Sequence record: MT586120.1
DNA length: 64,000 nt
Reading direction: 5' to 3' (one strand)
Shown here piece after piece: positions 9,118-46,900 of this stretch. Every line of letters begins with the position of its first letter. The stretch's first letter is position 1. A program made the position numbers and the translations under genes. Under the pieces are notes generated by a model. That model saw only the letters and a program-made list of their open reading frames with translations. It was not told the origin of the DNA and searched no databases.

Positions 9118-9118
9118 T

Positions 9119-30452: not shown

Positions 30453-30854
30453 ATGAATACTTATGGTTCTCCAGAAGGTTACCTATATAACCTTCATACC
30501 TGCTCCCCATCGGAAGCAAAGAGGATGTGGAAGAAAGCTATTAAAGAACAATGGGGTAATAAATGCGCTTACTGTGGCTCAGATACAAACCTAACATTAG
30601 ATCATATAGTTCCACGTTCAAAAGGAGGTAGTAACCATACAACAAATGTATTATGTGCATGTGAATCATGCAACGCAGACAAAGCATATACTGAATGGAT
30701 CATCTGGTATATCGAACAACCATTCTTCACAGAAGAGCGCCGTGAGGCAATCGAAAAATGGATGTTCCCTACAGAGGAAGTAAATCCAAATCTATTTGTG
30801 CAGGAGCAACCAAAGAGATACTCTTATGGTACCCGCAGAACTAGAGCTTACTGA
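30453..30854 (+). CDS. HNH endonuclease
   Basis: CAYCG...LTLDHIVPRSKGG.N...NVLCACESCNADK. Confidence 0.9.
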   Translation: MNTYGSPEGYLYNLHTCSPSEAKRMWKKAIKEQWGNKCAYCGSDTNLTLDHIVPRSKGGSNHTTNVLCACESCNADKAYTEWIIWYIEQPFFTEERREAIEKWMFPTEEVNPNLFVQEQPKRYSYGTRRTRAY

Positions 30855-31082: not shown

Positions 31083-34000
31083 ATGATTTCATCAGAAACC
31101 AAGATTTTACTTAAGCGTTCTGGCGTTCCAGGACGTATTCCATCCTTAGCGGACCTAAAACTAGGCGAGTTGGGTATCAACTATTATGACGGTAAGGTAT
31201 ACCTCCGTCAAGAAAATGATGTAGTTGGTTCCCGTATCATCGAGCCTGGTCAAGGTGACGATATTGGTAGGACTATTTTCGTAACCGTAAATGGTAACGA
31301 CAACAACTCTGGTCTTAACGAGAGAGACTCTGTAAGAACCATCAAAAAAGCCGCTGAGTTAGCTCAGTTTGGCGATGGTATCAAGGTGTATCCTGGTCAG
31401 TACATCGAAGACAACCCCATTACATTCCGCGATTTGGTTGCGGTTGAGGGTATGGATCTTCGTAACGTCCTAGTTACACCAGCAAACCCAGAGAAAGATT
31501 TATATTTAGTTGGTGACGGTTTCCACGCAACTAACCATTCATTCGTATCAAACCAAGATTCTCGCGATGCTGCCGCGATCATCTCATTCCGCCCTCTAGA
31601 AGGAACCGCATCTGATCGCTACTTTGATGCTGCCCGTCTAATCAGGGACAACCTAAACTTCATTTCAGGCGAAGCTGTAGGTTTCTTGACTAGTGGCTAT
31701 TCAGGCTTTGCTGCTGGTCAAAGATCTCAAGATGCTGCTCGTGCTATTGAACTCAACACAAACTTTATTAGTGAAGAGTCCTTCCAGTATATCAACAGCC
31801 CAGATTATAGGGGTCCAGCATACACTAATCCAGATATCAACCAGTGTCGTAGTGACCTAAAGGATATTCTAGCTGGATGGAGATATGACTTAATCTCTGA
31901 TGGTAACTCCGAGTCAACTGGTGTAGGTCTAACCTACTACGCACCAGTCAAGTTCACCAAGACTACAAATATTACTGACCTAGTTTATGATAACACAACT
32001 GGTTTGTTGGTTATTGAGACTGAACTAAGTACTCAATCACTACCTGGTGATGAGATTAAGCTAAGAGATATTCAACTAGATTGCCCTCCTTATGGTAATT
32101 CATTCCTAATTGCTGGATTTGATTATGATAATGTAAGTGGTGTTGGTACAGTAACTCTACCTTTCATCCACGATATTCAAGCTGGTGATACAATCAAGCT
32201 AGATGATCTCAAGTTTGACTGCCCTCCATATGGCGCTCAAGCATATTCAGTATCTGACTTTGTTTATGATGAGACTACTGGCGGAAGCACAGTAACTCTA
32301 TCAAGTAACCATAACCTTAAAGTTGGTGATGCAATTGAACTCCGCGATATGCAGTTTGATTGCCCAGCTTATGGTGGTACTTTCTCCAACGTTGTAAACA
32401 TTGAGTATAACAATGTAAGTGGAGAAGCAATCCTAACTTATGCGGATGCTGCTGACCTAGACGCTGGTGATGTTGTTCTTCTATATGATATCAAGCTATC
32501 CTGCCCAGCATACGGCAATGCTATTTCAATCACTGGCTTCGATTACGACAACTTTACTGGTATAACACAAGCTTCTTTCGCATCACCTCACGGTCTACGG
32601 GTTGGTGATCTTGTTAAGTTTGAGAACCTTAAGTTTAGCTGTGAGAGCTACTTGAGCGACACTTATAATATCGTTGGATTTGAGTACAACAATCTAACTG
32701 GTGAAGCTCTAGCATCATTCTCTTCTGATCACAACCTAGCTGGTGGAAGTAATGTTGTACTAGACAATCTAACCTTTGCTTGTAATAGCTACTTCCCAGA
32801 AGGAATCAATGTTACTGGATTTAACTACACCAATACAACTGGCGTAAGTACAATCAGCCTAGATCACGCACATAACTTACAGATTGGTGATCGTTTCCAA
32901 CTAGAAGACCTAGTATTTGCTTGTAACAGCTACTCATTCACTGATATTGATGTTACCGCAGCAACTTACGATAACGTTACTGGCTTTGTAAACATCACTC
33001 TAGCTGCTCCTCACGGCAGTTCTGTTGGTGAGTTCGTCAAGCTAGACGGTATTGAGTACTCTTGCCCTGGTGGTTCTGGTATCACAACTACAATCTTCCC
33101 TGATGGAACGATTGGTGATCAGTTTGAGATCCTTTCAGTACCTTCACCTAGTGCTTTGATTGTAAATGTAGGTCCTTCTGCAATCCCACACAGCTATGTT
33201 GGTGGAGGAACTGCTACGGTTGGTATTACTACAACAGTATTCCCTGATGGAACTCAAGGTAATGAGTTTGTTGTAACCGACCTAGTTGACTCCCTAACAT
33301 TGGTAACAAACGTTGGTGTATCTACTATCGCTCACACATATGCTGGTAGTGGTAAGATCTTTGTTGGCTTCACAACAACAGTATTCCCCGATGGAACACA
33401 AGGTAATGTATTCCCAGTTCTAGGAGTACCTGCTGCTAATCAAATAGCACTAAATGTTGGTACTAGCACCATCGAACATACTTATGTTGGTGGTGGTACA
33501 GCTTCTAATGAAGACACATTCCTAAATGTATCTGGCTTCACCTATAACGATGCCGATGGAACTGGATTAGTAACATTGGGTTCCAACCACAACCTAGTTG
33601 TTGGTGATAGTTTCATCCTAGAAGACCTCAAGTTTACTTGTGATAGTTACAGAAATACCGCAAGCACATTTGATATCAGTGACTTCCAGTATGATAATGT
33701 AACTGGTCTATCCACCGTTGTTATCACATCATCTCACGATCTACGGGTCAATGATACGATTGCTCTTTATGATATTGAGTTCTCTTGCCCCAATGGTTCT
33801 GGTATCACAACTACAATCTTCCCTGATGGAAGCGTAGATAACTTCTATGATGTTGTTGCGGTTATTGACCCCAACACAATCATCACTAGAGTCGGTACCT
33901 CCACAATCCCACATTCATATGTTCAGGGTGGTTTGCTTCAGGTTGGTATCACTACTAACATCTTCCCAGATGGAACACGTCCAAGTGATAACTTCTTTGA

Positions 34001-37000
34001 TGTTGTTTCAGTTCCAGCACCTAATCAGATCCTAACTAACGTTGGTTTGAGTTCTATTGCTCATACCTATGCTTCTGGCGGTAAGTTCTACACAGGCATC
34101 ACAACTAATATCTTCCCCCAGACATTTGAAGATCCTAATGTAAAAGTTGTTAATGCCGTATATGATAATGTAACTGGTGCCGTAACAGTCACCTGTGATA
34201 AGCCCCACGGTCTATTAGCTACTAATACAGTACTTCTCCAAGGGCTAGAGTTCTCCTGTGCTTCAGGCGGTCCTGGTGGTGCTCCTGGTGTATTGCTATT
34301 CCCACGTAACCAAGAAACTTATGAGGTTGTATCTGTAGCTACTCCTACAACTTACACCATCAATGTTGGTCCAAACAGCATCCCACATACCTATGTTAGT
34401 GGTGGTATTTCTACTCCACAAAACATCATTGATGCGGTATACAACAGAGCCAACGGAGAACTAACAGTTACTCTAAACAGACAGCACGGATATGTAGCAG
34501 GAGACACTGCTAGTGTTGTTGATTTAGTATTCTCCTGCCTATCTGGTGGAGAAGGTAATGCTCCAGGTGAACTAATCTTCCCTCGTCCTACTGATGAGTT
34601 TGTACTACTATCAATCTCTGGTAGTGAGTTTACTGTAAATGTAGGTGAGTCAAGTGGACTACCCCACACCTATGTAAATGGTGGTTCTGTAAGCTATGCT
34701 GGAACAACCGCACAAGTAACAAGTGCATTATACAATGAAGAGACTGGTGTTCTAACAGTTACAACTAGTGCTCCATTGGGTGCTGCTGTTGATAACGTAG
34801 TCACAATGCAGGGTCTAAACTTTGCTTGTAACTCCGGTGGTCCTGGTAATGACCCAGGCACAATCATCTTCCCACGCCTAGATGTTCCTGTATTCAAAGT
34901 ATCTAAAGTTATCAGTGGCGTAACTTATGTAATCAACGTCGGTACTTCTACTCTAGCACATACTTATGTGTCTGGTGGATTCTCAAGCCTAAAGAAAAAG
35001 GTTAATGATAACAACCTATTCAGAGTATTGGGCGTACCTACTCCCAACACAGTAGTAACTAATGTTGGTGTAAGCTCCATCCCACACACATATGTAAGTG
35101 GTGGTAATGGTTTCGTAGGAATTACAACTAACATCTTCCCTGACGGTACACGCCCTAACGGTAGCCGCTTTGAAGTGTTGAGTGTCCTATCACCTAACAA
35201 GGCAGTCATCAACGTAGGTGTCTCTACAATCCCACACTTCTATGAGAGTGGTGGTCAGGTTCAGTATGGTGAGACAAATGAGCGTCCCATCCTAGCATTT
35301 GATTACAATAACCTAACTGGTGGAGCCAGAGTCACGGTTCGTGGTCCTCACGGTCTATCAGCTGGCGATAGCGTCAAGTTTGATGGTATGGAGTTTGAGT
35401 GTGTTAATAGCCCAGGCATTACAACTACAATCTTCCCTGACGGAACAGCAGCAAGTCTTAACCTCTTCCCTGTAACTGGTGTAGTAAACAACACCGTATT
35501 TGATTGTAATGTTGGACGGGTTCCTTTCACTCACACATATATTCAGGGTGGTTCTGCTTTCGTAGGAATTACAACTAACATCTTCCCTGACGGCACACAA
35601 GGTTATAACTACACTGTTACTGGTGTTCCTTCATCCAATAAGGTCAACGTAAACGTCGGTGTTTCAAGCATCCAACACAACTATGTTCGTGGTGGAGCAC
35701 TATTTGCTGGCGAAACTAACGAGCGTGATATTGTTAACTTCAGCTATGATAATGAGTCTGGTCTAGCTATTCTAACTCTACGTCAGCCTGAAGATTTATA
35801 CACAGGCAACCTTGTTAAGTTGAAGGGGCTTGAGTTTGATTGCCCCGATAGTACTGCTATCACTACAAATATCTTCCCTGATGGTTCACAAGGCTTCCTA
35901 TTCCCAGTCACCGAGAGACTAAATCCAACACAATTCCAGTTGAATATTGGTCGCTCAACAATCCAGCACAACTATGTACGGGGAACTGGCGCAGCATTCG
36001 TTGGTATCACTACTGATATCTTCCCTGACCTATCAACACAACCAACAAAACTATTCAATGTTGTTTCTATCCCTTCACCCAACACCGTTGCGGTTCAGGT
36101 AGGAACTTCCACAATCCCACACAACTATGAGAGTGGTGGAACATTATCCGTTGGTATTAACACAGACATCTTCCCAGGTAGCAGTGTTGTGTCTCCTCTT
36201 GGCGATACATTTGTTATTGATGCCGTCACTTCTTCTGGTGAAATAGTAATTAATGTAGGAACTTCTTCTATCACTCACAACTATGAGCGTGGTGGTCAGG
36301 TTCTATATGGACAGAGTTCTGGTGGAGAGCTACAGCACATCACTGGTCCTGGTGTTATGGATGCGACTATCGCAGCTATTGACTTTGAGCGGCAGATGTC
36401 TAAGTATGTTTTGAATAACCGCCCTTGGGGTTCATTCATTGCTGCTGAAACTGGAATCGTTAATGGTATTGATTATGATAATGTAACTGGCTTCGCTACA
36501 GTAACCGTACCTGGAATCAACGCTCAGCGTGGCGATATGGTAAGGATGAGTGATATTCAGTTCGTATGCTCTGATGAGTACGCTGGACTAACTACCACAT
36601 TCTTCCCAGACAACACACGCCCAGAGGGTCAGTACTTTGAAGTTGAATCTCGTATTGATGAGAACTCATTTGAGACTTTCATTGGTATTTCTTCCATCAA
36701 GCATAATCACTTGAGAGGTGGTAATGTATACCGCTACAGACAAGGTATTGAGAATGTAATCTATGATAGAGCATCTGGTCTAGCTAGTGTAACCTCAATG
36801 GCTCACGGTTATAAGGTTGATGATATCATCGAAATGGGTGATATTAGATTTACCTGCCCAGTATTCACACCTGACTACGACATTGAGAACTTCACATACG
36901 ATAACACAACAGGTTTATCACAAGTAACTACAACAGTTGATAACGATATTCAAATTGGTGATTTGGTTCGCCTAGATGATATCCAACTTGACTGTCCTGC

Positions 37001-40000
37001 TTATGGTAACGAGAGAGTTATTACGGACTTTGAGTACAACAATCTAAACGGTTACTCTGAAATTACAGTAGCATCTCCTCACGGTCTACAACTAAACCCA
37101 AGAACACCAGTAGCAATCACCACCGCAGTTTATGATAATGTAAGTGGTATTGTTACAGTAACTACTGCTGCTCCACTCAACATTGATTTGAGTATCAATA
37201 ACGGAGTTCAGCTAACGGGTCTTGGATTCACCTGTTCTAACTCAACCACAACTACTAATGTTGTTGGTGCTGTATACGATAACACAACTGGTGTTGTAAG
37301 AATCACAACCAACGCAGCTAACAACGCTGCTGTGAGTTCCAAGGTTAAGTTACAGAATCTAATCTTCTCTTGTGAGAGTGGTGGAGTTCCTTCCGATCAG
37401 GCATTCCCAAGTGGTGTTGATGGCTTTGACTTCCTAGTCAGTGAAGTAATCAGCGCAACCGAGTTCAACGCTATCGTTGGAGTCAGCACACTAACTCACA
37501 CATATGTAACTGGCGGAACCGCACAAGTTGGTATCACTACTAACATCTTCCCTAGTGATGATACTCTTATCTACCCAATAACAAATATTGAGAGTAGCAC
37601 TAAGTTCTCACTACAAGTTGGTCCTTCTGCCTTTGCCCACACCTACACGGGTGGTGGTGATGCTACCAAGGTCAATCGTTATAGTGTGAAGCTAGCGGAT
37701 ATTAAGTTTGATTGCCCTGCTTATGGTAATGATATTGGTGTTACTAACTTTATTTACGATAACACATCAGGTAATTCACTAGTAACCGTAGATTCCAATC
37801 ACGGATTGAATGTTGGAGATAGCATTAAGCTAGCCAACCTCAAGTTCCAGTGCCCTCCTTATGGTAATCAGTTCAATGTTATTGCTGCTGACTACGATAA
37901 TGTAACTGGTATCATTACAGTAACAACTGACCGCGACCTAGATGGTATTTCTGTTGATGAAGTATTGAGACTAAGAGATTTACAGTTTGATTGTAACTCT
38001 GGTACTCCCTATGCTATTCAGCAGGTTACTTTCGACCCATTCAATGGTCGTATCGCAACTCTATCACTCGGTCAGAACCCACAGGTCAATCCAGGTGACC
38101 TAATCAAACTAGAAGGTCTTCTATACAGAAATGCTGCTGGTGAGGAAGTTCCATACCCAGACGGTAGAGATGCTAGCTACAATATTTTTGAAGCTCGTTC
38201 AGTAACCCAGGTCAATGCTAGCACTTGGGAAGTTACGGTTCAGTTCAACAATATTACTGATAGCTTGGTAATCTTTATTCCTAATGGATCTAGCTACGGT
38301 ACATTATTCACTGGCGTAACTGGTAACATCTTCCCCGAAAATGTTGGACCAGAAGGTGGCTTCTATAATGTATTGAGCCTACCATCACCTAACCAGTTCG
38401 CAATACAAGTCGGAACCTCAACGATTCCACACACATACATCCGCAATGGTGAAGCATTCTCTGGCGTAACAACCAACTTCTTCCCAAGCACAGACCCACA
38501 GAACTCACCACTAGGTAATCTCTTTGAGGTTGTAGGAGTTCCTACTCCAACACAAGTGAGAATCAATGTAGGCGTATCAAGTATCAGCCACATCTATGAT
38601 TCTGGTGGTCAGCTATTGGTTGGTATCACTACTAACATCTTCCCTGATGGAACACAAGGTAACTTGTTCCCTGTTGTAAGTATCGGTAGTTCCACTGAAC
38701 TCCGCGTCAATGTAGGAACATCTTCTATCCCTCACAACTATATCAGTGGTGGATTGATGTTCGTTGGTATTACTACTAACATCTTCCCTGGTGACCCACA
38801 GAACTCACCACTAGGAAACATCTTTGAGGTTCTTGGTAAGGATGATGATTGTGGTAAGGATCGCTTTACTATCAACGTAGGTGTATCAACTATCCCTCAC
38901 GCATATGTAGAAGGTGGTACGGTAACCACAGGCGTAACTACAAGCCGCTTCCCAGATGGAACCAACGGTTTTGAGTTCCCAGTTGAGAGTGTATTGGACG
39001 CAGACACATTCATTGTTAATGTGGGTCCTTCATCAATCTCTCACACATATGTTGATGGTGGCTATTCTCGCCGCTTGGAGAGCCCAATCAATTCATTCCT
39101 ATATGATAATGTAACTGGTTTCGCTGATGTTGGAATCACTAGCCACAGACTAAACGTCGGTGACCTAGTTAAGCTACGCGATATCAAGTTTGATTGTGAC
39201 CCATATGGTGGTGAGAAGTTCATCAACAATGTAGTATACAACAACCTAACTGGAAGACTAAACGTCAATACTATTGAGCCACACGGTCTATCTCTAAATG
39301 AGACCATCAAGCTCTCTGGTATTCAGATGGACTGCCCTGCTTATGGTAATCAGATTGCTATCACTGGCGCATCATACAGTAATACTACTGGTGTTATTGA
39401 TGTTACAGTCACCCAGGCACACAACCTATCTATTGGCGATAGCGTCAAGCTAGATGGTTTAGATTTCGTATGCCCTGGTGGTTCTGGTATCACAACTACA
39501 ATCTTCCCTGACGGAACAGCAGCAAGCTACAACATCTATGAAGTTGTATCAGTACCTGCTGCGAATAGCCTAACAGTAAATGTAGGAACCTCAACGATTC
39601 CACACACATATACAGGCGGCGGAAACATCTTCGTTGGTATCACTACCAACATCTTCCCAGGCAGCGCACAGAACTCACCACGCGGTAGCTTCTTCGAGGT
39701 TCTAGACACTCCATCAATTACAGAGTTCACTCTAAATGTTGGCGTATCTTCCATCGCTCACGGATATATTCGCGGCGGTTTCGTTCAGACTGGTGTAACA
39801 ACAGACATCTTCCCTGACGGAACACAAGGTGATTACTTCCAGGTTGGTGAGATTATTGACGAAGATAACTTCACAATCGATGCTGGTATCTCATCAATCA
39901 CTCACAGATATAACTCTGGTGGTTATGGTGCTAAGTATGTTACTTATCAGGCAAGAACACCACAGGTTGTCGATACATCAGTAATCCGCGTAAGCGGTGG

Positions 40001-43000
40001 CTGTAAGGCAGCTGAAGCTCGTGTAGATCAGTTGGCTGGGATTGTAACCTCTATCATACAGAACGGTCCTTCAGCGGCTCCTGGTGATGTCCCACTTAAC
40101 GTAGTGGCTGCTTCTTATAACAAGCAGACTGGTGACCTATCAGTAACAACCTCAGGTGAGACTGGCGTTGCTCCTGTGGATACAGTTAAGATTGAGAATC
40201 TAATCTTCCAGTGTAGCAAGGTAAGCAATGTTATTGGTGCTACCTATGATAACACAACAGGCAAAGCTATCATCACAACAGATGATGACAACGGCATCAG
40301 TATCGGCACCAAGATTAGATTGGAGGGACTAAACTTCGCTTGTAATGACGGAAGCCTAGTATATCCTTCAGATCCAAATACGGTGTTTGATGTTATTGTT
40401 GTTCTAGGAGACAATAGATTTGAGCTTGACTTGGCTAAGTCAACAAAAGTTCATACTTGGACTGGTGGTGGTGTTTGTACTACGGTACCTACAACACGCA
40501 CATTCCCAGACAATAAAGTATTCATCTACAATGTTAAGTCTGTTCTATCACCAACAACATTTACTGTAAATGTAGGTCCTTCTGATATCGATCATTCATA
40601 TATCAGTGGCGGTCACGTATCACCAGGTCTACGCTACCAGGTTGATAACGCAGAATACAATAAGATTACTGGTCTTCTAACAGTAACTACCGATGTTGAT
40701 AATCAACTCATAGCAAATACTGGAGTCAAGCTAAATGACTTACAGTTCTCCTGTACTTCAGGTGGTGCTAACAATCAGCCAGGTATTCTACCATTCCCAG
40801 ATGGTCGTCCAGCTAACGTTGTGGCTGCTACTTATAATAATGTAACAGGTCTTCTTCGTGTTACTACAGATAAGCCTCATCAAGCATACGCAGATGTTAA
40901 GGTTCGCCTAGAAGGACTTGAGTTCTCCTGCCCAGGTGGTTCACTCATCTACCCAAGCAATCCTAATCAGTTGCTTCGCGTAACTAAAGTAGAAGACTTC
41001 TATACATATGAAGTTCTACTTGAGCCATCATCAAAAGTACATACTTATGTTCAGGGTGGAACATCTAGCACAGGAACGAACCACTATTGCGTAGATTCTG
41101 TAATCAACTCACGCACATTTACAGTACAAATGGCTCCAAACAACCTAACTCACACATATGTGAGTGGTGGTACGGTTGCTTCAGTATTCTGTGAACAGAT
41201 TCTAACTGGAATCAACCTACGCACAGCCAAGTGTGCTGATGATGTGAAGAAGATTTACCTAGCAGTTGTTCACGATGTTACTCGTGGCGGTAATATGAAG
41301 TCCGTTGCGGCAGCTAGAAAGTACTACGACGCAGTTGGTCAGTATCAGCACATTGCTGGTGGTGAAGTCAACCAGACCGTAGCGGCACTAGACTACTCAC
41401 TAAATGTCGTTCGCTGTGTAATCAATAACGTATCTTGGGGTGGCGTTCCACGTGGCTACTTCACTTCAAGGGAGAGAGCATTCATCCCAACCAAGTCAAA
41501 CCTAGACGCACCTTTGGCTAACAGGTCACTATCAAGAGACCTACTACGCCTAGCGGATATGCCTCCTTCAACAACACAATCTGTTGTTTGTATTGAGAAG
41601 CCTTTCGAGAAGGGTCAGTATACAACCAATAAGAAGTTTATTGAGGCATTTGACTACGATAACGTCACTGGTATTGCTTCAGTTACTACTACCCAGGCAC
41701 ACCGCCTAATCAAGTATGACGCAATCCGCCTAGATGATATCAAAATGCGTTGTGTTGGTAGTCCAAGAATCACCACAAATCTATTCCCAGATGGAACTCA
41801 AGGTGATATCTTCGAGGTCAAGCAAACCTTCCAGGATAATCCAATCTATCCAGTAAGTGATGCTACTTATAACAATACCACTGGTAATCTACTTGTCGAG
41901 TCTCTCGGTAGTAATCTAGAACTTGAAGTAGGAACTCTAGTTAACCTACGCAACTTGAGATTTGAGTGTAGTTCATCTGGTGCTCCAGGCACTATCGTCT
42001 ATCCAACAAACTCAGATTATGTATATGAGGTTAAGAAGATTATCAACGGAGATACAATCCTAGTCAACGTTGGTGTATCAACTCTGGTACATACCTTTGT
42101 CCCAACATCAACTACTTTCAATGTACCTCAGTTCCAAGAGCTTCCTAGAAAGTTCATCGCTCACGTAGGAACAGTTGGTTTCCCACATATCTACGAGCAA
42201 GGTGGAACTGTATGGAAGCAAGAGCCATTCCAAACTCCAGAAAGTGCTACCCAGTTGCGCGATGTATCAATTCAAAATGATCCGTTACAGTTTACCAATA
42301 GCACACCTAATGCTTGTGCGAATGTCTTCTCCGCCATTGAGAATACAGTTGGCGTTGTAACAACAATCATCGATGTTGGGTTTGAAGATTCTGGTATCTC
42401 TGTTAGGTATCCAGGTAATGATGGTAGGGGTGTTGATTCATTCGATCAAATGTCCTCACAGGGTGTCGGTAACATCATCAGGGGTCCATACATCCGTAAC
42501 TGCACGAACTTTGTTCCTAAGTCAATCGGTATGAGAATGGACGGTTTCGATGCTGAACCAGGCGATGAAATCTCCAACGGTGTTCAAGGTTCATCTAACG
42601 TTGACTCATTCACCCAGTTTAACCCAGGCGGTATTGGTTGTTCCGTATCAAATGGTACCTACCAGCAGCTCGTTTCTATCTTCACCATCTGTTGTGACCA
42701 GGCTATTGTTTGTGACTCAGGCGCACAGCTTGACCTTACAAACTCTAACAGCTCCTTCGGACGCTTAGGTCTAGTCGCTCGCGGTATTGGTGATGCTAAG
42801 TCCAAGTGTATTGACCGCTACACGGGTATCGTTGCTGAGGAAGCCCAAATTGAAGATGATACAGTCATCATCCGGGGAGTGGGCGAGAAGCGCCCTTATG
42901 ACGGTCAAGGAATCTTCTTTGGAGAACTCTTCCGCGAAGTTATCCGAATCGATGTTACTGATGGGGGTTCTGGTTATGATGACGAGAATCCACCAGTAGC

Positions 43001-43589
43001 AACGGTAGATCTTCCCACTGGTCCTTCAGGTATTAAAGCTGAGGTATCACCAACAGTCCTAGACGGTGAGGTTGTTTCCATTGAACTTATCTCAAATGGT
43101 AACCAGTACAGAGACATTAGTCCAACTGTAACTATCGCACCACCAAGAGATCCTGAAGGCAGACAAGCTAAAGCTGTTGCGATCACAGAGCCTATCTACT
43201 ATGACGTTGATAGTTCATCTGCTCCAGTAGAAGGAACTGTGAGAGTCGTATTCAAACAGAGGCTAAATAATACAGTATCTGTAGGCACCACTGTATTCTT
43301 CTCTCGCCTAAGTCTACAAATCGCATCCTCACACTCCTTCGAGTACATCGGATCCGGTAATGAGATCAACGGCGCGAGACCTTCACAGGGCGGTGTTCCT
43401 ATTAAGGCTAATGAGATCGTTAAGCAGGAAGGCGGTTCTATCGTCTACACCTCAACCGATCAGGCAGGTAACTTTAACATCGGTGATGACTTCGTAATCA
43501 ACCAGTTCACTGGTACAGTTACGGGTAGGTCCTTCGACCAATCGGTGCTAAATAAGGTAACGCCACTAATCATCGCATTGGATAGCTAA
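31083..43589 (+). CDS. Giant (4168 aa) tail fibre/adhesin with split beta-helix, helical domains and 33 nested beta-modules
   Basis: N-terminal LLKRSGVPGRIP...LGELGINYYDGKVY fibre motif; FVTVNGNDNNSG...RTIKKA beta-helix start; PYIRNCT...DSFTQFN...LVSIFT beta-helix end; repeats in between. Confidence 0.85.
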   Translation: MISSETKILLKRSGVPGRIPSLADLKLGELGINYYDGKVYLRQENDVVGSRIIEPGQGDDIGRTIFVTVNGNDNNSGLNERDSVRTIKKAAELAQFGDGIKVYPGQYIEDNPITFRDLVAVEGMDLRNVLVTPANPEKDLYLVGDGFHATNHSFVSNQDSRDAAAIISFRPLEGTASDRYFDAARLIRDNLNFISGEAVGFLTSGYSGFAAGQRSQDAARAIELNTNFISEESFQYINSPDYRGPAYTNPDINQCRSDLKDILAGWRYDLISDGNSESTGVGLTYYAPVKFTKTTNITDLVYDNTTGLLVIETELSTQSLPGDEIKLRDIQLDCPPYGNSFLIAGFDYDNVSGVGTVTLPFIHDIQAGDTIKLDDLKFDCPPYGAQAYSVSDFVYDETTGGSTVTLSSNHNLKVGDAIELRDMQFDCPAYGGTFSNVVNIEYNNVSGEAILTYADAADLDAGDVVLLYDIKLSCPAYGNAISITGFDYDNFTGITQASFASPHGLRVGDLVKFENLKFSCESYLSDTYNIVGFEYNNLTGEALASFSSDHNLAGGSNVVLDNLTFACNSYFPEGINVTGFNYTNTTGVSTISLDHAHNLQIGDRFQLEDLVFACNSYSFTDIDVTAATYDNVTGFVNITLAAPHGSSVGEFVKLDGIEYSCPGGSGITTTIFPDGTIGDQFEILSVPSPSALIVNVGPSAIPHSYVGGGTATVGITTTVFPDGTQGNEFVVTDLVDSLTLVTNVGVSTIAHTYAGSGKIFVGFTTTVFPDGTQGNVFPVLGVPAANQIALNVGTSTIEHTYVGGGTASNEDTFLNVSGFTYNDADGTGLVTLGSNHNLVVGDSFILEDLKFTCDSYRNTASTFDISDFQYDNVTGLSTVVITSSHDLRVNDTIALYDIEFSCPNGSGITTTIFPDGSVDNFYDVVAVIDPNTIITRVGTSTIPHSYVQGGLLQVGITTNIFPDGTRPSDNFFDVVSVPAPNQILTNVGLSSIAHTYASGGKFYTGITTNIFPQTFEDPNVKVVNAVYDNVTGAVTVTCDKPHGLLATNTVLLQGLEFSCASGGPGGAPGVLLFPRNQETYEVVSVATPTTYTINVGPNSIPHTYVSGGISTPQNIIDAVYNRANGELTVTLNRQHGYVAGDTASVVDLVFSCLSGGEGNAPGELIFPRPTDEFVLLSISGSEFTVNVGESSGLPHTYVNGGSVSYAGTTAQVTSALYNEETGVLTVTTSAPLGAAVDNVVTMQGLNFACNSGGPGNDPGTIIFPRLDVPVFKVSKVISGVTYVINVGTSTLAHTYVSGGFSSLKKKVNDNNLFRVLGVPTPNTVVTNVGVSSIPHTYVSGGNGFVGITTNIFPDGTRPNGSRFEVLSVLSPNKAVINVGVSTIPHFYESGGQVQYGETNERPILAFDYNNLTGGARVTVRGPHGLSAGDSVKFDGMEFECVNSPGITTTIFPDGTAASLNLFPVTGVVNNTVFDCNVGRVPFTHTYIQGGSAFVGITTNIFPDGTQGYNYTVTGVPSSNKVNVNVGVSSIQHNYVRGGALFAGETNERDIVNFSYDNESGLAILTLRQPEDLYTGNLVKLKGLEFDCPDSTAITTNIFPDGSQGFLFPVTERLNPTQFQLNIGRSTIQHNYVRGTGAAFVGITTDIFPDLSTQPTKLFNVVSIPSPNTVAVQVGTSTIPHNYESGGTLSVGINTDIFPGSSVVSPLGDTFVIDAVTSSGEIVINVGTSSITHNYERGGQVLYGQSSGGELQHITGPGVMDATIAAIDFERQMSKYVLNNRPWGSFIAAETGIVNGIDYDNVTGFATVTVPGINAQRGDMVRMSDIQFVCSDEYAGLTTTFFPDNTRPEGQYFEVESRIDENSFETFIGISSIKHNHLRGGNVYRYRQGIENVIYDRASGLASVTSMAHGYKVDDIIEMGDIRFTCPVFTPDYDIENFTYDNTTGLSQVTTTVDNDIQIGDLVRLDDIQLDCPAYGNERVITDFEYNNLNGYSEITVASPHGLQLNPRTPVAITTAVYDNVSGIVTVTTAAPLNIDLSINNGVQLTGLGFTCSNSTTTTNVVGAVYDNTTGVVRITTNAANNAAVSSKVKLQNLIFSCESGGVPSDQAFPSGVDGFDFLVSEVISATEFNAIVGVSTLTHTYVTGGTAQVGITTNIFPSDDTLIYPITNIESSTKFSLQVGPSAFAHTYTGGGDATKVNRYSVKLADIKFDCPAYGNDIGVTNFIYDNTSGNSLVTVDSNHGLNVGDSIKLANLKFQCPPYGNQFNVIAADYDNVTGIITVTTDRDLDGISVDEVLRLRDLQFDCNSGTPYAIQQVTFDPFNGRIATLSLGQNPQVNPGDLIKLEGLLYRNAAGEEVPYPDGRDASYNIFEARSVTQVNASTWEVTVQFNNITDSLVIFIPNGSSYGTLFTGVTGNIFPENVGPEGGFYNVLSLPSPNQFAIQVGTSTIPHTYIRNGEAFSGVTTNFFPSTDPQNSPLGNLFEVVGVPTPTQVRINVGVSSISHIYDSGGQLLVGITTNIFPDGTQGNLFPVVSIGSSTELRVNVGTSSIPHNYISGGLMFVGITTNIFPGDPQNSPLGNIFEVLGKDDDCGKDRFTINVGVSTIPHAYVEGGTVTTGVTTSRFPDGTNGFEFPVESVLDADTFIVNVGPSSISHTYVDGGYSRRLESPINSFLYDNVTGFADVGITSHRLNVGDLVKLRDIKFDCDPYGGEKFINNVVYNNLTGRLNVNTIEPHGLSLNETIKLSGIQMDCPAYGNQIAITGASYSNTTGVIDVTVTQAHNLSIGDSVKLDGLDFVCPGGSGITTTIFPDGTAASYNIYEVVSVPAANSLTVNVGTSTIPHTYTGGGNIFVGITTNIFPGSAQNSPRGSFFEVLDTPSITEFTLNVGVSSIAHGYIRGGFVQTGVTTDIFPDGTQGDYFQVGEIIDEDNFTIDAGISSITHRYNSGGYGAKYVTYQARTPQVVDTSVIRVSGGCKAAEARVDQLAGIVTSIIQNGPSAAPGDVPLNVVAASYNKQTGDLSVTTSGETGVAPVDTVKIENLIFQCSKVSNVIGATYDNTTGKAIITTDDDNGISIGTKIRLEGLNFACNDGSLVYPSDPNTVFDVIVVLGDNRFELDLAKSTKVHTWTGGGVCTTVPTTRTFPDNKVFIYNVKSVLSPTTFTVNVGPSDIDHSYISGGHVSPGLRYQVDNAEYNKITGLLTVTTDVDNQLIANTGVKLNDLQFSCTSGGANNQPGILPFPDGRPANVVAATYNNVTGLLRVTTDKPHQAYADVKVRLEGLEFSCPGGSLIYPSNPNQLLRVTKVEDFYTYEVLLEPSSKVHTYVQGGTSSTGTNHYCVDSVINSRTFTVQMAPNNLTHTYVSGGTVASVFCEQILTGINLRTAKCADDVKKIYLAVVHDVTRGGNMKSVAAARKYYDAVGQYQHIAGGEVNQTVAALDYSLNVVRCVINNVSWGGVPRGYFTSRERAFIPTKSNLDAPLANRSLSRDLLRLADMPPSTTQSVVCIEKPFEKGQYTTNKKFIEAFDYDNVTGIASVTTTQAHRLIKYDAIRLDDIKMRCVGSPRITTNLFPDGTQGDIFEVKQTFQDNPIYPVSDATYNNTTGNLLVESLGSNLELEVGTLVNLRNLRFECSSSGAPGTIVYPTNSDYVYEVKKIINGDTILVNVGVSTLVHTFVPTSTTFNVPQFQELPRKFIAHVGTVGFPHIYEQGGTVWKQEPFQTPESATQLRDVSIQNDPLQFTNSTPNACANVFSAIENTVGVVTTIIDVGFEDSGISVRYPGNDGRGVDSFDQMSSQGVGNIIRGPYIRNCTNFVPKSIGMRMDGFDAEPGDEISNGVQGSSNVDSFTQFNPGGIGCSVSNGTYQQLVSIFTICCDQAIVCDSGAQLDLTNSNSSFGRLGLVARGIGDAKSKCIDRYTGIVAEEAQIEDDTVIIRGVGEKRPYDGQGIFFGELFREVIRIDVTDGGSGYDDENPPVATVDLPTGPSGIKAEVSPTVLDGEVVSIELISNGNQYRDISPTVTIAPPRDPEGRQAKAVAITEPIYYDVDSSSAPVEGTVRVVFKQRLNNTVSVGTTVFFSRLSLQIASSHSFEYIGSGNEINGARPSQGGVPIKANEIVKQEGGSIVYTSTDQAGNFNIGDDFVINQFTGTVTGRSFDQSVLNKVTPLIIALDS

Positions 43590-43593: not shown

Positions 43594-43944
43594 ATGGCAG
43601 CAGTAGCACTAAACAAATTTCTAACGGTAAGACATTTGGTTACCGACTCCAATGTGGGGATTTATACCTCCCCCATTGGTGTTGCTTCCATCGTTCTTTT
43701 TGCCCAGGCAACGAACGTGTCTTCCGATGGTGAAGTAAAATTCGTCACCTTTTCTCACGCCAGACCAGGTGATATACCAGTGGATTTTCAAATTATCAAT
43801 GATGGTCCAGTCATCCCCAACGATGCACTGAACCTAATTATTGGTAGACTTGTCCTGGAAACAGGAGATGAGTTAATCCTTTCAGGCGATACGACCGGAG
43901 ATGTGAAGGTTGTAGTCTCTATTCTCGAAACAGCTAAGAGCTAA
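43594..43944 (+). CDS. Small conserved virion-associated protein
   Basis: IYTSPIGVASIVLFAQATN...LVLETGDEL...VSILETAK; CTAAATA near 43548. Confidence 0.7.
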   Translation: MAAVALNKFLTVRHLVTDSNVGIYTSPIGVASIVLFAQATNVSSDGEVKFVTFSHARPGDIPVDFQIINDGPVIPNDALNLIIGRLVLETGDELILSGDTTGDVKVVVSILETAKS

Positions 43945-43973: not shown

Positions 43974-46900
43974 ATGGCATTATTTTATCAGTCAGGCAGA
44001 GTAAGTAGATTCGCAGTAGGTACACCTGGGTTTTCAACCAACAGGGACCTAACTCTTAATGTGTCTGGCGCTATTGGTATTGAAACTACTAAACCTAGGG
44101 GGAGCATTGATACTCCAGAGATTAGTATTAGAGGACCAATTATTGACTCAGGAATCAATACAGGTGGTTTAGGATATTTCTTATCACAGGATGTAGAAGG
44201 TGTTAAGTGGGTTGCTGCTTCACCAGAAGACTTAACATTTATTAGAGTATTTGAAGATAATGTACAGGTTGGCGTTAGTTCCTTCAGTGGACTAAACTTC
44301 ATATCAAATGACTCTTCATTATTTGATATTAAAGAAAGTCCAATTGGTCCCAATATTGCGGACATTAATTTTAATACATACTGGATTAGAACCGAGTATG
44401 GTAATAACGCAGGTATTTCAACTGGTTATGGACCAGACGGCACCTATGCTTCCCTCCCTGGTTATGGAACCAGCGAAGCAGTAGGTGTTACTTCTGTTGG
44501 TATTGGAACAGACAATCCACAAGATGACTTCCAAGTTGGTATTGGATCCACTGGTGTTACTATCAATGGACCTGAAGGTAAGCTAGAAGCAGAAATTATT
44601 AAAGCCAAGAACCTTGAGCTTGATGGTAATATTACTGTTAGATCACTAGTTGTTGATCCAGGTATTGCTACATTCCGTGGAAATATTGATGCTCAAGGTA
44701 TCTCTAGCTTCACTGGGGATGTTATAGCTGGGTTCGCTACTATACAGGAGCTATATGTAAATGATTTAGAGGTTGAATTATTCAGGGCAGGTGTATCAAC
44801 ATTAGGTTTTGGACAATCGGCATCTTCATTTACTATTGTAGAGAATAGTTTAGAGGTTCAGGGTGCTATTGGTACATTTATCAATGATCTATATGTCGGA
44901 AATGACCTTTATGTTGCTGGTGATACATTCTTCAACCAGATCAATGCCGAAAATATTCAAGTAACAGGCATTGCGACATTAAATAATGTTGAAGGAAACA
45001 CGGGGATCTTCACTAGCTTTGAAGTAACAGGGATCACCACACTAAATCAGCTTGAGTTTAATACGGGAGTAGGTACTGATTTACAGTTAGAGTCTTCAAC
45101 TATTGGTGTATTAACAGCGACTGATGTTAGTGCTGGTGTTGCTACTATTGGCTTTGCTAATATTGATGATGCTAATATCAGTGGTATCGTAACAGTAACC
45201 GAAGTTGATGTAGAAGAGATTGATATTGAGCGTGCCCAAGTAGGCATCCTAACAATCACTGAGGGTCTATCAGTAACTGGTACCAGTACCTTTGTTGGTC
45301 TAGTAACCGTAACTGGCGACGCATTCATTGATGGTGACCTAACAGTTACTGATCAGTTCACAGTACAAGATCTAGGAGCAGAGAACCTAGAAGTAACTGG
45401 TATTGGTACCATTGTAAATCTAGAATCTAATGTTGGTATTATCACCACATTGTTCACAGAAGGTTCTGTTAATACTGGTGTTGGTACATTCAATGTTGTT
45501 GAAGCCAATGATATTCAGTCAGGCACTGGTACTATTGGTGGTGTTGGCTTTGAGTCTGGTAGGCTAGAGGGAACTGAACTAGATTTTGATATTGGTCGCA
45601 TCGGTATTCTAACTGGTGACCTACTCAGTTATGGTATTGGTACATTTAGAGATAGGCTAGACAGCCCAGGCATCTCTAATATTGCCGTTGCTATTGGTAA
45701 TACTCTAAACTATGATAGCACATCACAGATTAATGGTGTTACATTTGGTGATGAGTTAGTAGATATATTCAATAGAGACCTAAGAGTAACTGGCATAACA
45801 ACCTTTACTGGTGTGGGTACATTCGGATCAGATCTATATGTAAAAGAAGATCTATTTGTTGGTGGTGAACTAAGTTTTGAACAACTAACAGGTACCAACC
45901 TACAGGTTCTAGGTATCGCAACAGTTAATCAACTAGATCTAAACACAGGTATTGGTACCTTCCTAGACCTAGAGTTCCTACAAGTTGGTGTTGCTACTAT
46001 CACCAACCTACTAGGAACGATCTCAACAATCACCAGAATGGACTCTGGTACTGTTGCTGTTACTACTGATCCAGGTAAATATCCAACATCAGACGGTCAG
46101 TTCTATGCTGATAGATCATTCATTGAATTTTCTAATGCCCTTGATAGTCGCACCACAGACTTTGTTGCTAGAGAAACAGCAGACATCCAAGGTACATTAG
46201 AAGTTGTTGGTCTATCAACATTCGATTCTGATATTGATGTAAACGCAGATATCAATGTATCTGGTCTAACTACAACCAACTTCCTATTCGCTGGCGTAGG
46301 TACAATCCTACTATTAGATACAGACTTCATTGACTCTGATGAGATCAACGCAGGTATCATTACAACCCAAGATTTAGTTGTTACAGGTTCTGCTGACTTC
46401 CAAGGAGATGTTGTTGTAGACATCGGTGGTACAGCTAATATCACCAACGCAAACATTGGGTTCGCTAGCGTCACTGAGGAGGTCGTAGGAACCTCTACAG
46501 TAGGCTTCTTGAGTGCTACTGATGCGAACATCGGCGTAGCAACTGTCGGGCTTCTAAGCGCCACAGATGCAGAGATAGAAGACCTTGAGGTTAATACATT
46601 CCGTGCTGGTATTGCTACGGTAGGCTTCGGTTCATTCGGCACTGATCCAAATGAAGGTTCCCTATATGTAACGGGTATCAATACATTTGTTGGCTTCACT
46701 ACATTCACTGGAGAGGTTTATGTTGATGGTGACCTAACAGTATCAGGTATTACAACATTCAAGCAGTTGGATGCGGAACAATCACAGATTGGTATCCTAA
46801 CCACCAAGACTCTACTAGATTCTAATGGTCTAATCGACGCAGAGAATGTTGCTATCAGCACAAACCTAACAGTTTCTGGTCTAACAACTCTAACTGGATT

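What the first reader, a model, noticed from the sequence alone, without database searches (positions are those of the whole stretch)
31941..42221. Giant protein repeats nest like balanced parentheses: a recursive domain-in-domain tree
Seen: two half-motifs of about 45-50 aa: A = ..YDN.TG...VT....H.L..GD.(V/I)KL..(L/I).F.C and B = GITT.IFPDG....F.V..V......VNVG.S.I.H.Y..GG. They do not simply alternate. Reading A as open and B as close by hand: block 1 (about 31941-36308) runs 8A 3B 2A 2B (B head, AB AB AB, B tail) B A 2B A 3B = 15/15; block 2 (about 36450-39938) 12/12; block 3 (about 40086-41183) 4/4; block 4 (about 41632-42221) 2/2. Depth never goes negative, reaches 8, and returns to zero exactly where non-repeat sequence resumes. 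Some halves are themselves split by whole modules (B: about 34095 resumes 34989; A: about 37074 resumes 37674). Inference: an A+B domain of about 95 aa repeatedly inserted into its own loops, giving a branched rather than beads-on-a-string fibre. I know of no described protein with recursive self-insertion at this depth.
Basis: partly seen in the sequence, partly recalled or inferred. Interest (0 to 1): 0.92.

Follow-up and report, generated by a model that had tools for sequence, protein, structure and literature searches.

The report
Self-nested barrel domains, giant phage fibre
A 4168-residue tail-fibre-like protein of the marine cyanophage S-CAM7 is built from 33 copies of one small beta-barrel domain that are inserted into each other's loops up to eight levels deep, so that the chain reads like balanced parentheses; such extreme self-nesting seems not to have been described and recurs in many other giant phage fibre proteins.

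Summary
The region is one intact ORF (window 31083-43589, 4168 aa) of Synechococcus phage S-CAM7, annotated as hypothetical. The word is balanced, reaches depth 8 and returns to zero at each non-repeat spacer. One A and three B are split by whole balanced modules.

- Short homologues carry a single contiguous AB unit.
- All differences among orthologues add or remove balanced substrings.
- Stack-matched A/B pairs hundreds of residues apart co-vary across 24 orthologues (0 of 100,000 re-pairings reach the observed value); first-in-first-out pairing gives nothing.
- Loss of the conserved Cys of A goes with loss of the conserved His of its matched B.
- In AlphaFold2 models, A halves with a partner form four strands and orphan A halves only the first hairpin.
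- A nested AABB fragment folds confidently (pLDDT 84, pTM 0.60) into barrels like the E1 FCCH domain, the P22 I-domain and the endosialidase barrel.

No coordinates were available, so contacts and fibre shape are not shown. The nearest precedent is the nested SBHM array of cyanobacterial RNA polymerase Si3, which is shallower and has another fold. Nested A/B arrays up to depth 9 also occur in unrelated giant phage proteins.

The parts
31083..43589 (+). Giant ORF, 4168 aa, no internal stops. It is QLF86304.1 'hypothetical protein' of Synechococcus phage S-CAM7 and a full-length member of phrog_3442.
31083..31955 (+). N-terminal conserved part (aa 1-291): fibre-anchor-like N-terminus, likely start of a pectate-lyase-type beta-helix, and first scaffold segment. 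It is shared with the 836-928 aa homologues.
   Evidence: phrog_17885 'tail fiber protein' E 2.1e-91; weak DUF1565 E 0.0028, below cut-off; tblastn hit to a Vibrio phage 'pectin lyase fold' protein; blastp to S-T4 aa 4-328
31956..36299 (+). Block 1 (aa 292-1739): 15 A and 15 B, depth 8. As a tree: D1>D2>{D3>{D4>D5>{D6>D7>D8, D9>D10; D11, D12, D13 in the B loop of D5}, D14}, D15}.
34080..35108 (+). Split B of domain D5: head aa 1000-1012 and tail aa 1300-1342, enclosing three complete AB units (aa 1017-1300).
   Evidence: B hits covering hmm 2-34 and hmm 12-50; conserved in orthologues, with 4 AB units in P0003
36300..36443 (+). Spacer 1 (aa 1740-1787): non-repeat scaffold segment homologous to S-T4 aa ~224-285.
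   Evidence: 38.8% identity HSP q224-383 / s1729-1886
36444..39926 (+). Block 2 (aa 1788-2948): 12 A and 12 B in three top-level sub-trees, aa 1788-1881 (AB), aa 1884-2661 (depth 6) and aa 2664-2948 (AAABBB).
37005..37718 (+). Split A of domain D19: head aa 1975-2006 and tail aa 2200-2212, enclosing AABB (aa 2007-2193). Most orthologues have AB here instead.
38001..38297 (+). Degenerate adjacent pair D24: an A without the conserved Cys (aa 2307-2349) followed by a divergent B without the conserved His (aa 2350-2405).
39927..40085 (+). Spacer 2 (aa 2949-3001): scaffold segment homologous to S-T4 aa ~385-433.
   Evidence: 40% identity HSP q332-433 / s2902-2995
40086..41174 (+). Block 3 (aa 3002-3364): AABB, then A with a split B (head aa 3226-3240, tail aa 3328-3364) enclosing one AB.
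41175..41624 (+). Spacer 3 (aa 3365-3514): second copy of the scaffold segments, homologous to S-T4 aa ~207-285.
   Evidence: HSP q207-358 / s3377-3586
41625..42209 (+). Block 4 (aa 3515-3709): A with a split B (head aa 3557-3585, tail aa 3674-3709) enclosing one AB.
42210..43589 (+). C-terminal conserved part (aa 3710-4168), 46% identical to the C-terminal 440 aa of the short homologues. It is the likely remainder of the beta-helix or fibre body.
43594..43944 (+). Small ORF (116 aa, phrog_1276) that follows the fibre gene in every homologue inspected. It may be an assembly partner; this was not tested.

Best explanation
A (about 44 aa, four strands) and B (about 50 aa, three strands) are the two halves of one beta-barrel domain of about 95 aa. 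The barrel is of the kind that other proteins use as inserted domains: the E1 FCCH domain, the P22 coat I-domain and the endosialidase barrel.

In this fibre protein, further copies of the same barrel sit inside its loops.
- Most copies sit in the A|B linker.
- Three sit in the 'PDG' loop of B.
- One sits in the loop of A after its conserved His.

The chain therefore runs outward through A halves and returns through B halves, and each A closes with the B that balances it, last opened first closed. The 33 barrels form four tree-like arrays. These arrays are themselves inserted in a non-repeat scaffold that lies between a conserved N-terminal anchor/beta-helix start and a conserved C-terminal body.

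Shown by evidence:
- the parse;
- the conservation of balance in relatives;
- the evolutionary coupling of matched halves;
- the barrel fold of AB and AABB in models.

Inferred:
- Every array begins and ends at one point, so whole subtrees can be gained or lost without disturbing the rest. This explains homologues with 1, 2, 3, 5, 6, 23 and 31-35 barrels.
- The gene sits in the tail-fibre and baseplate module and matches tail-fibre PHROGs, so the protein is most likely a virion fibre or spike.
- Its barrel trees would serve as a long, multivalent, easily remodelled surface for contact with the host envelope (glycans or pili).
- A conserved Cys in A and a conserved His in B may form a shared site, possibly a metal site, that staples the halves.
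For: Parse and context:
- HMM parse and depth profile.
- The divergent element is a true B.
- Homologues S-T4 and Sf-CH5 have one contiguous AB unit; S-SKS1 has AB AB.
- The spacers match scaffold segments of S-T4.

Balance in relatives:
- Within the S-CAM7 family, 25 of 38 proteins are perfectly balanced under an automatic token rule.
- The other 13 are off by 1-2 tokens; the cases traced were at degenerate or split elements.
- Architectures of 33/33, 35/35, 34/34, 32/32, 31/31, 23/23, 6/6, 5/5, 3/3, 2/2 and 1/1 differ only by balanced substrings.
- Other giant phage proteins with different scaffolds carry balanced A/B words up to depth 9.
- Among 143 further representatives, 54 of the 61 with equal A and B counts are well formed, against 15.4 expected for a random order.

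Coupling of matched halves:
- Correlation of residual divergence across 24 orthologues is 0.209 for all stack-matched pairs and 0.170 for 19 nested pairs. No re-pairing in 100,000 reached either value.
- First-in-first-out pairing gives 0.006.
- The true partner beats enclosed, linearly closer B elements in 64 of 82 comparisons.
- For nested pairs, mean mutual information is 0.1847 against 0.1735 +/- 0.0017, and the top-20 APC-corrected MI is 3.73 against 2.77 +/- 0.19 (0 of 300 for both).
- Cys and His are lost together: odds ratio 7.1 for all pairs and 5.3 for nested pairs. Pairs lacking both number 56, against 38.7 +/- 2.7 on within-protein re-pairing (0 of 1000).

Structure models:
- In the aa 432-1001 model, the orphan A4 and A5 show only their first hairpin, while the matched A6-A10 show their later strands as well (four each for A6-A8 and A9).
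- The AABB model has pLDDT 84.2 and pTM 0.60. Its outer A has four strands at block-mean pLDDT 81-95, and its low-confidence loops are the observed insertion sites.
- Fold matches: 2v31 FCCH (TMt 0.53, probability 1.0), 2m5s P22 I-domain (TMt 0.49, probability 1.0), and phi92 endosialidase chains (probability up to 0.99; K1F-type 0.5-0.8).
- In BFVD the matches are cyanophage tail-fibre and baseplate proteins.

Tail-module context.
Against: - The tools return no coordinates, contacts or PAE, so no A(i)-B(match) contact was seen.
- The 570-aa model has pTM 0.32, and the pLDDT of orphan A halves (about 73-80) is barely below that of matched ones (about 80-84).
- Similarity among A paralogues does not track similarity among their matched B paralogues within S-CAM7 (Mantel r 0.10, p 0.13; nested pairs r 0.22, p 0.085).
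- 13 of 38 family members and 23 of 44 distinct words in more distant proteins fail the automatic balance test by 1-7 tokens. I attribute this to undetected divergent or short pieces and to truncated contigs, but checked only a few cases.
- The orthologue statistics rest on 24 related sequences, and Fisher p-values on pooled orthologues overstate independence. The permutation controls are the fair numbers.
- There is no sequence-level link to any Pfam family or PDB entry, and fold matches are modest (TM about 0.5).
- Oligomeric state, presence in the virion and any binding function are untested.
Confidence: 0.8

Rival explanations
1. Matched A and B halves do pair, but between the chains of a trimer. 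The arrays would then be a fold-back trimeric fibre: strands go out as A and return as B, as in the needle of the T4 long-tail-fibre tip. They would not be strings of autonomous monomeric barrels.
For: The N-terminus and the PHROG matches are of tail-fibre type, and most phage fibres are trimers (general knowledge). Related proteins carry the Mtd_N domain PF18454. Nothing here tests oligomeric state.
Against: A monomer AlphaFold2 run folds AB and AABB into confident closed barrels (pLDDT 84). These match monomeric inserted barrels (FCCH, P22 I-domain). Branch points, where two or three subtrees sit in one loop, are hard to place on a single three-fold axis.
Confidence: 0.12
2. A and B are two independent small modules strung like beads. 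Equal numbers and the parenthesis order arise by chance or from how tandem duplications happened.
For: A and B show no detectable homology to each other (hhalign probability 0.2%). Runs of pure A or pure B exist. The paralogue Mantel test is not significant.
Against: Balance holds in four separate blocks and at all three spacers. It is kept through every architecture change in relatives. It recurs in unrelated scaffolds (54 well formed against 15.4 expected). Matched distant halves co-vary. Halves of 44-50 aa are split by whole balanced modules. Orphan A halves are incomplete in the model.
Confidence: 0.04
3. A and B pair, but in order of appearance (first A with first B) or in some other crossing scheme, not as a stack.
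For: Equal counts and the non-negative prefix property are also required by a first-in-first-out scheme.
Against: First-in-first-out pairing shows no coupling (0.006, against 0.209 for stack pairing). Inserted pieces inside split halves are themselves balanced. Differences between homologues are contiguous balanced substrings, that is, subtrees.
Confidence: 0.02

Closest known systems
Si3 insertion of cyanobacterial RNA polymerase beta' (eight sandwich-barrel hybrid motifs; PMC10895346)
   Same: One small beta domain is repeated and inserted into copies of itself. Four of the eight SBHMs are built from distant parts of the chain. The whole array is itself an insertion in a host element (the trigger loop) and forms an elongated appendage.
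   Different: Si3 has 8 domains, with SBHM-2 to -5 discontinuous, so by my reading the nesting is about 4-5 levels; this protein has 33 domains and depth 8 (depth 9 in relatives). The fold is SBHM, whereas here no SBHM or lipoyl-type hit appears among the top 50 fold matches. Si3 is a cellular enzyme regulator, not a virion fibre. No branching by tandem subtrees and no split of both halves is reported in the passage read.
Inserted beta-barrels: E1 ubiquitin-activating enzyme FCCH domain, P22 coat protein I-domain, endosialidase (K1F, phi92) barrel
   Same: These are the best structural matches to the AB barrel (2v31 TMt 0.53; 2m5s TMt 0.49; 4hiz probability 0.99). Each is a domain inserted in a loop of a host domain (general knowledge). 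The endosialidase barrel sits in a phage tailspike.
   Different: They occur as single insertions, not self-nested. There is no sequence-level relation (best PF16190 E-value 0.15 in 1 of 13 units; no PDB hit at E <= 10).
Out-and-back hairpin architectures: periplasmic adaptor proteins (AcrA, MexA) and the T4 gp37 fibre tip
   Same: The chain runs to a distal tip and returns, so proximal domains are made of an N-terminal and a C-terminal piece. This is from general knowledge and was not tested here.
   Different: The nested domains of the adaptor proteins are of different folds (membrane-proximal, barrel, lipoyl, hairpin) and there is one level of each. The gp37 tip is an intertwined trimer, not a series of barrels.
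Ordinary tandem-repeat phage fibres and adhesins (Ig-like or Big arrays, collagen-like fibres such as window ORFs 13461-17660 and 21065-22618)
   Same: Long virion appendages built by repeating a small module; the gene neighbourhood is the same.
   Different: In those proteins each repeat is contiguous and self-contained. Here most domains are discontinuous in sequence.

Membership tests
Recursively self-inserted domain arrays (type case: RNAP Si3 SBHM array) | Domains formed from two sequence-distant halves that flank further copies of the same domain | tested here: met
   Balanced parse with split halves. Stack-matched distant halves co-vary. A nested AABB fragment folds with the outer A complete. 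No contact map was available.
Recursively self-inserted domain arrays (type case: RNAP Si3 SBHM array) | SBHM (barrel-sandwich hybrid) fold and homology to RNAP Si3 | tested here: not met
   The top 50 PDB fold matches contain no SBHM, lipoyl or RNAP entry. There is no Pfam hit. The protein works like Si3 but is not a member.
FCCH / P22 I-domain / endosialidase-type inserted beta-barrels | Small (about 90-120 aa) closed beta-barrel of this topology | tested here: inconclusive
   Foldseek probability 1.0 but TM only 0.49-0.53 to 2v31 and 2m5s. BFVD hits include proteins named 'E1 FCCH domain containing' and 'Endosialidase beta barrel domain containing'.
FCCH / P22 I-domain / endosialidase-type inserted beta-barrels | Sequence-profile membership (PF16190 E1_FCCH, or the endosialidase barrel family) | tested here: not met
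   PF16190 reaches E 0.15 in 1 of 13 AB units, with nothing else. The PDB profile search found 0 hits at E <= 10.
Phage tail fibre / tailspike proteins | Profile match to tail-fibre families and position in the tail/baseplate gene module | tested here: met
   phrog_17885 'tail fiber protein' E 2.1e-91 (N-terminal part) and 5.4e-124 (C-terminal part). Neighbours match baseplate-wedge and long-tail-fibre PHROGs. Synteny is the same in ACG-2014f, S-SKS1, Sf-CH5 and S-T4.
Phage tail fibre / tailspike proteins | Presence in the virion; trimeric assembly | not testable with these tools
   No proteomic or imaging data for this protein were found. Only monomer predictions were possible.
Pectate-lyase-type right-handed beta-helix (tailspike body) formed by the N- and C-terminal parts | Profile or structural match to a beta-helix | tested here: inconclusive
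   DUF1565 E 0.0028, below its cut-off. A tblastn hit to a Vibrio phage 'pectin lyase fold' protein has E 8e-6. No PDB sequence relatives were found.
Beads-on-a-string tandem repeat proteins | Each repeat unit contiguous and independently foldable | tested here: not met
   The order is not alternating and halves are split by modules. Orphan A halves are incomplete in the model. Distant halves are coupled.

The most novel reading that the evidence does not exclude
Recursive self-insertion of one beta-barrel may be a general and so far undescribed way in which marine phages build very large fibres. On this reading:
- a single chain folds into rooted trees of barrels (33 here, depth 8; depth 9 in other scaffolds);
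- the chain always returns to its starting point, so whole subtrees can be added or pruned by evolution without unfolding the rest;
- matched halves are stapled by a shared Cys/His site, perhaps a metal site;
- the result is a branched, bottle-brush-like multivalent adhesin rather than a linear fibre.
Probability: 0.5. Interest if true: 0.85.

Novelty: new variant of a known kind. Interest (0 to 1): 0.74.

Why it matters
Domain insertion is common, but it is usually one or two levels deep. A chain whose 33 domains are almost all discontinuous raises a sharp folding problem: the first A half must wait about 1400 residues for its partner. It is therefore a natural test case for co-translational folding, for chaperone need (a small conserved ORF follows the gene), and for structure predictors.

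The architecture also shows an evolutionary mechanism for resizing a fibre in whole-domain steps, with homologues ranging from 1 to 35 barrels.

It explains why repeat finders and domain databases see nothing in these very large 'hypothetical' proteins of abundant ocean viruses. The A/B grammar gives a simple way to annotate them: 565 clusters in 1.84 billion representative proteins.

If the barrels bind host surface structures, these proteins are part of how cyanophages meet their hosts.

Tried and rejected
- **Paralogue 'mirror tree'.** I tested whether similarity among A paralogues within S-CAM7 tracks similarity among their matched B paralogues. It was not significant. I replaced it with the orthologue residual-divergence test.
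- **Automatic balance checkers.** The first two were too strict or mis-handled split pieces, giving 10 of 38 and 11 of 38 well formed. The final objective rule gives 25 of 38. The earlier numbers are reported so the dependence on the rule is visible.
- **Sequence searches that found nothing useful.** These were Pfam on the four quarters and on single AB units, the PDB profile search with AB, and PDB searches with the N- and C-terminal parts.
- **SBHM idea.** I had expected a lipoyl/SBHM-type fold, but the fold search does not support it.
- **A related to B.** I tested whether the two halves form a pseudo-symmetric pair; hhalign rejects it.
- **Recent DNA duplication or assembly artefact.** This is rejected. 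DNA copies inside the gene are only 60-75% identical. The first ~2.9 kb of the gene and its upstream region are 99.4-100% identical in four S-CAM7 records, the whole protein has an exact database copy (P0001), and about 30 metagenomic orthologues are full-length.
- **Literature.** Searches for a prior description of nested barrels in phage fibres found none. Most subscription journals are not covered.
- **File handling.** /data appeared to lack loci; the loci were in one multi-record file.

Full report
**What is there**

The finding lies in one open reading frame, window 31083-43589 on the + strand. It encodes 4168 aa with no stop. The window is 100% identical to Synechococcus phage S-CAM7 (MT586120.1), a T4-like cyanomyovirus of the Kyanoviridae. 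The ORF is annotated there as a hypothetical protein.

The whole protein matches phrog_3442 (unknown function). Its first 291 and last 459 residues also match phrog_17885, 'tail fiber protein'. That profile is 1002 positions long, which already suggests a shorter version of the same protein with far fewer repeats. Pfam sees nothing except a sub-threshold DUF1565 match, which marks the start of a pectate-lyase-type beta-helix, at aa 69-115.

The neighbours are tail genes:
- collagen-like and other tail-fibre-like ORFs upstream;
- baseplate-wedge-like and long-tail-fibre-like giants downstream.

**Checking the observation**

I built profile HMMs for the two half-motifs from window sequences alone and iterated them on the protein.

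- Block 1, aa 292-1739: 8A 3B 2A 2B, B-head [AB AB AB] B-tail, B A 2B A 3B.
- Block 2, aa 1788-2948: AB | AA A-head [AABB] A-tail AAA b BBBBB | AAABBB.
- Block 3, aa 3002-3364: AABB | A B-head [AB] B-tail.
- Block 4, aa 3515-3709: A B-head [AB] B-tail.

The one weak element, 'b' at aa 2346-2408, is a genuine B. An alignment of its orthologues matches the B profile with hhalign probability 98.9% and E 1.5e-17.

Reading A as 'open' and B as 'close', the depth never goes negative and peaks at 8. It is zero at aa 1739, 1881, 2661, 2948, 3178, 3364 and 3709. The three long non-repeat spacers all sit at zero depth. By simple counting, a random order of 33 A and 33 B is balanced with probability 1/34. 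Three spacers hitting the 6 zero-depth junctions among 65 has probability about 4.6e-4.

**Relatives**

A tblastn search with the N-terminal 291 aa finds the gene in many cyanomyoviruses. Four were fetched.

| Phage | Length | Word |
|---|---|---|
| ACG-2014f | 3967 aa | 31/31 |
| S-SKS1 | 928 aa | AB AB |
| Sf-CH5 | 836 aa | AB |
| S-T4 | 836 aa | AB |

In S-T4 a single contiguous AB unit sits between non-repeat segments, which shows that A+B is the unit.

A blastp of S-T4 against S-CAM7 shows that the S-CAM7 spacers are copies of those non-repeat segments. S-T4 aa 207-285 matches S-CAM7 aa 1729-1787 and aa 3377-3514, and S-T4 aa 385-433 matches aa 2949-2995. The repeat blocks are therefore insertions in a scaffold, and that scaffold lies between the conserved N- and C-terminal parts. 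The nesting thus continues outward beyond the A/B level.

A protein search returned about 30 full-length metagenomic orthologues, 43-87% identical over the aligned part. Their parses differ from S-CAM7 only by balanced pieces:
- AB instead of AABB inside the split A;
- four instead of three AB units inside the split B (P0003);
- AB instead of AABB, or AAABBB instead of AABB, in block 3;
- in P0025 and P0027-P0030, block 1 is AAAAABBABBABBB (7/7). This is block 1 minus AAABBB, AABB and ABABAB.

With an objective token rule, 25 of 38 family members are perfectly balanced. The other 13 are off by one or two tokens. The cases I traced were at degenerate places: the Cys-less A, short heads and tails, and partial B hits. 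Stricter or cruder rules gave 10 and 11 of 38, so the count depends on how divergent pieces are detected.

**Beyond the family**

The same A and B profiles find arrays in other giant phage proteins with different scaffolds. Some carry PF14240 and are 4.4-7 thousand aa long. Others carry PF13884 and PF18454 and are about 3.4 thousand aa long.

Of 44 distinct words in these proteins, 21 are perfectly balanced. Examples:
- AAAAAAAABAABBBBBBBBAAAABBBBB (14/14, depth 9; P0035-37);
- ABAAAAAAABBBBBBB (depth 7);
- AAAAAABBBBBB.

An exhaustive profile search with 13 AB units finds 565 clusters at E <= 0.001 among 1.84 billion representatives. Of the 143 new representatives listed, 61 have equal numbers of A and B, and 54 of these are balanced. 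A random order would give 15.4. Many failures look like contig-truncated fragments.

**Do matched halves belong together?**

I compared the pieces as separate alignments and never joined them.

(a) Orthologue divergence. For 24 orthologues with the full architecture I computed each element's pairwise distance vector. I regressed out the protein-wide mean and correlated the residuals.
- Stack-matched A/B pairs correlate at 0.209, against -0.015 +/- 0.027 for random matchings (0 of 100,000).
- The 19 matched pairs that are not adjacent in sequence, up to 1400 residues apart, correlate at 0.170, against -0.002 +/- 0.032 (0 of 100,000).
- First-in-first-out pairing gives 0.006.
- The true partner beats enclosed B elements that are closer along the chain in 64 of 82 comparisons. 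Linkage by recombination therefore does not explain the signal.

(b) Mutual information. MI between A and B columns is higher for nested matched pairs than for consistent re-pairings. The mean is 0.1847 against 0.1735 +/- 0.0017. The top-20 corrected MI is 3.73 against 2.77 +/- 0.19. No re-pairing in 300 reached either value.

(c) Conserved residues. A has a conserved Cys (column 43, present in 95% of elements) and B a conserved His (column 43, 80%). The two are lost together in stack-matched pairs. The odds ratio is 7.1 overall and 5.3 for nested pairs. Pairs lacking both number 56, against 38.7 +/- 2.7 after re-pairing within each protein (0 of 1000). In S-CAM7 the only A without the Cys is followed by the only B without the His (aa 2307-2405).

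(d) A negative result. Within S-CAM7, similarity among A paralogues does not significantly track similarity among their matched B paralogues (Mantel r 0.10, p 0.13). Matched halves were therefore not obviously copied together recently. This fits the old age of the repeats, whose DNA copies are 60-75% identical.

**Structure**

The tools return confidence and secondary structure but no coordinates.

Model 1 covers aa 432-1001 and used a 25-sequence orthologue alignment. It contains two orphan A halves (A4, A5), followed by the balanced pieces AAABBB and AABB. Mean pLDDT is 75 and pTM is 0.32.
- The orphans show only their first hairpin and no strands in their second half.
- The five partnered A halves show their later strands as well: four strands each for A6-A8 and A9, and three listed elements for A10, the last a long strand.
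- pLDDT hardly distinguishes orphan from matched halves, so this is supportive rather than decisive.

Model 2 is the nested fragment AABB, aa 809-1002. It used 42 natural AABB segments from paralogues and orthologues. Mean pLDDT is 84.2 and pTM is 0.60.
- The outer A is complete, with block-mean pLDDT 81-95.
- The two low-confidence spots are the inner A|B linker and the 'PDG' loop of the outer B.
- Those are the loops that carry insertions elsewhere in the protein.

Fold search of model 2 against the PDB gave these best matches:
- the FCCH domain of ubiquitin-activating enzymes (2v31, TMt 0.53, probability 1.0; many Uba1 and UBA6 chains);
- the I-domain of the P22 coat protein (2m5s, TMt 0.49, probability 1.0);
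- the barrel of phage endosialidases (phi92 4hiz, probability up to 0.99; K1F-type entries 0.5-0.8);
- the N-terminal barrel of F1-ATPase subunits.

The first three are domains inserted in loops of a host domain, which requires adjacent termini. That is what self-nesting needs. Against predicted viral structures, the hits are cyanophage 'tail fiber-like', 'baseplate wedge initiator', 'long tail fiber' and 'Endosialidase' proteins. They also include phage proteins annotated with FCCH or endosialidase-barrel domains. There is no sequence-level relation to any Pfam or PDB entry. A and B are not detectably related to each other.

**How it most likely works**

AB is one barrel. New copies sit in three of its loops:
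- the A|B linker (most cases);
- the B 'PDG' loop (three cases in S-CAM7);
- the A loop after its conserved His (one case).

The chain goes out through A halves and comes back through B halves. Written as trees:
- Block 1: D1>D2>{D3>{D4>D5>{D6>D7>D8, D9>D10; D11, D12, D13 in the B loop of D5}, D14}, D15}.
- Block 2: D16; D17>D18>D19{D20>D21 in its A loop; D22>D23>D24}; D25>D26>D27.
- Block 3: D28>D29; D30{D31}.
- Block 4: D32{D33}.

Each subtree starts and ends at one point, so it can be gained or lost as a unit. This matches the differences seen among relatives.

The following are inference:
- that the protein is a virion fibre or spike, from PHROG matches and synteny;
- that the N- and C-terminal parts form one beta-helix body, from weak evidence only;
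- that the trees project from it as multivalent contact surfaces;
- that Cys and His form a shared site.

One preprint reports that S-CAM7 binds type IV pili of its host more often than S-PM2 or S-RSM4 (10.1101/2025.09.20.677514). Another reports that S-CAM7 evolves mainly through changes in structural and tail-fibre genes, and through deletions in regions specific to S-CAM7 (10.64898/2026.10.08.757702). Neither names this gene. I treat both as leads only.

**Comparison with what is known**

The nearest precedent in kind is the Si3 insertion of cyanobacterial RNA polymerase. It has eight SBHM domains, and four of them (SBHM-2 to -5) contain elements from distant parts of the chain (PMC10895346). 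The principle of recursive self-insertion is therefore known. Here the fold is different, the number of domains is about four times larger, and the depth is 8-9. There is also branching, and both halves can be split. The setting is a family of virion proteins.

Searches of the open literature found no description of nested barrels in phage fibres. Subscription journals are mostly not covered, so absence is not proven.

**Verdict**

The physical pairing and the shape still need coordinates. I rate it a new, extreme variant of a known kind.

No rule slip that I am aware of. All sequences used were read from the window or returned by tools. Halves were never joined. Consensus lines printed by the alignment tool were not used.

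Noticed in passing
window 43594-43944 (+): A 116-aa ORF (phrog_1276, no Pfam hit) directly follows the giant gene. ORFs of 342-351 nt occupy the same place after the homologues in ACG-2014f, S-SKS1, Sf-CH5 and S-T4, although their homology to it was not tested. The longer phrog_1276 profile also matches the B repeats of the giant protein. It may be an assembly partner or chaperone.
   Followed up: partly
proteins P0035-P0037 (about 5470 aa), P0038, P0046 and others: Other giant phage proteins on different scaffolds (PF14240; PF13884 with PF18454) carry balanced A/B arrays, one reaching depth 9. The nesting is a property of the barrel family, not of this gene alone.
   Followed up: partly
window 38001-38297 (aa 2307-2405): The only A without the conserved Cys is paired with the only B without the conserved His. 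Across 263 proteins these two losses go together in matched pairs. This hints at a shared Cys/His site, perhaps a metal site, possibly with the conserved His of A (column 26).
   Followed up: partly
window 30453-30854 (+): An HNH endonuclease gene (PF14279 E 1.7e-12) lies just upstream of the giant gene. ACG-2014f has an HNH gene in the same position.
   Followed up: no
window 6059-10683 (+): A sugar-nucleotide and glycosyltransferase cassette lies upstream of the tail-fibre genes: GDP-mannose 4,6-dehydratase, an epimerase, a DegT-family aminotransferase, and glycosyltransferase families 11 and 8 (weak). Relatives also have epimerase, sulfotransferase and glycosyltransferase genes nearby. Whether it modifies the virion or the host surface is unknown.
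   Followed up: no
window 13461-17660, 17695-19878, 21065-22618, 22663-25710 (+): A run of further large tail-fibre-like ORFs, several with collagen-like repeats (phrog_28263; PF01391).
   Followed up: no
window 43974-49577, 49639-53763, 53847-55916, 56122-57258 (+): Downstream giants match baseplate-wedge PHROGs. The 1374-aa and 689-aa ORFs end in a region like long-tail-fibre distal subunits. ORF 56122-57258 carries a Peptidase_S74 intramolecular chaperone domain.
   Followed up: no
window 31083-43589, DNA level: Copies of the repeat are only 60-75% identical in DNA, with no long near-identical stretches. The array is therefore old and is not being homogenised by recent duplication or conversion.
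   Followed up: yes
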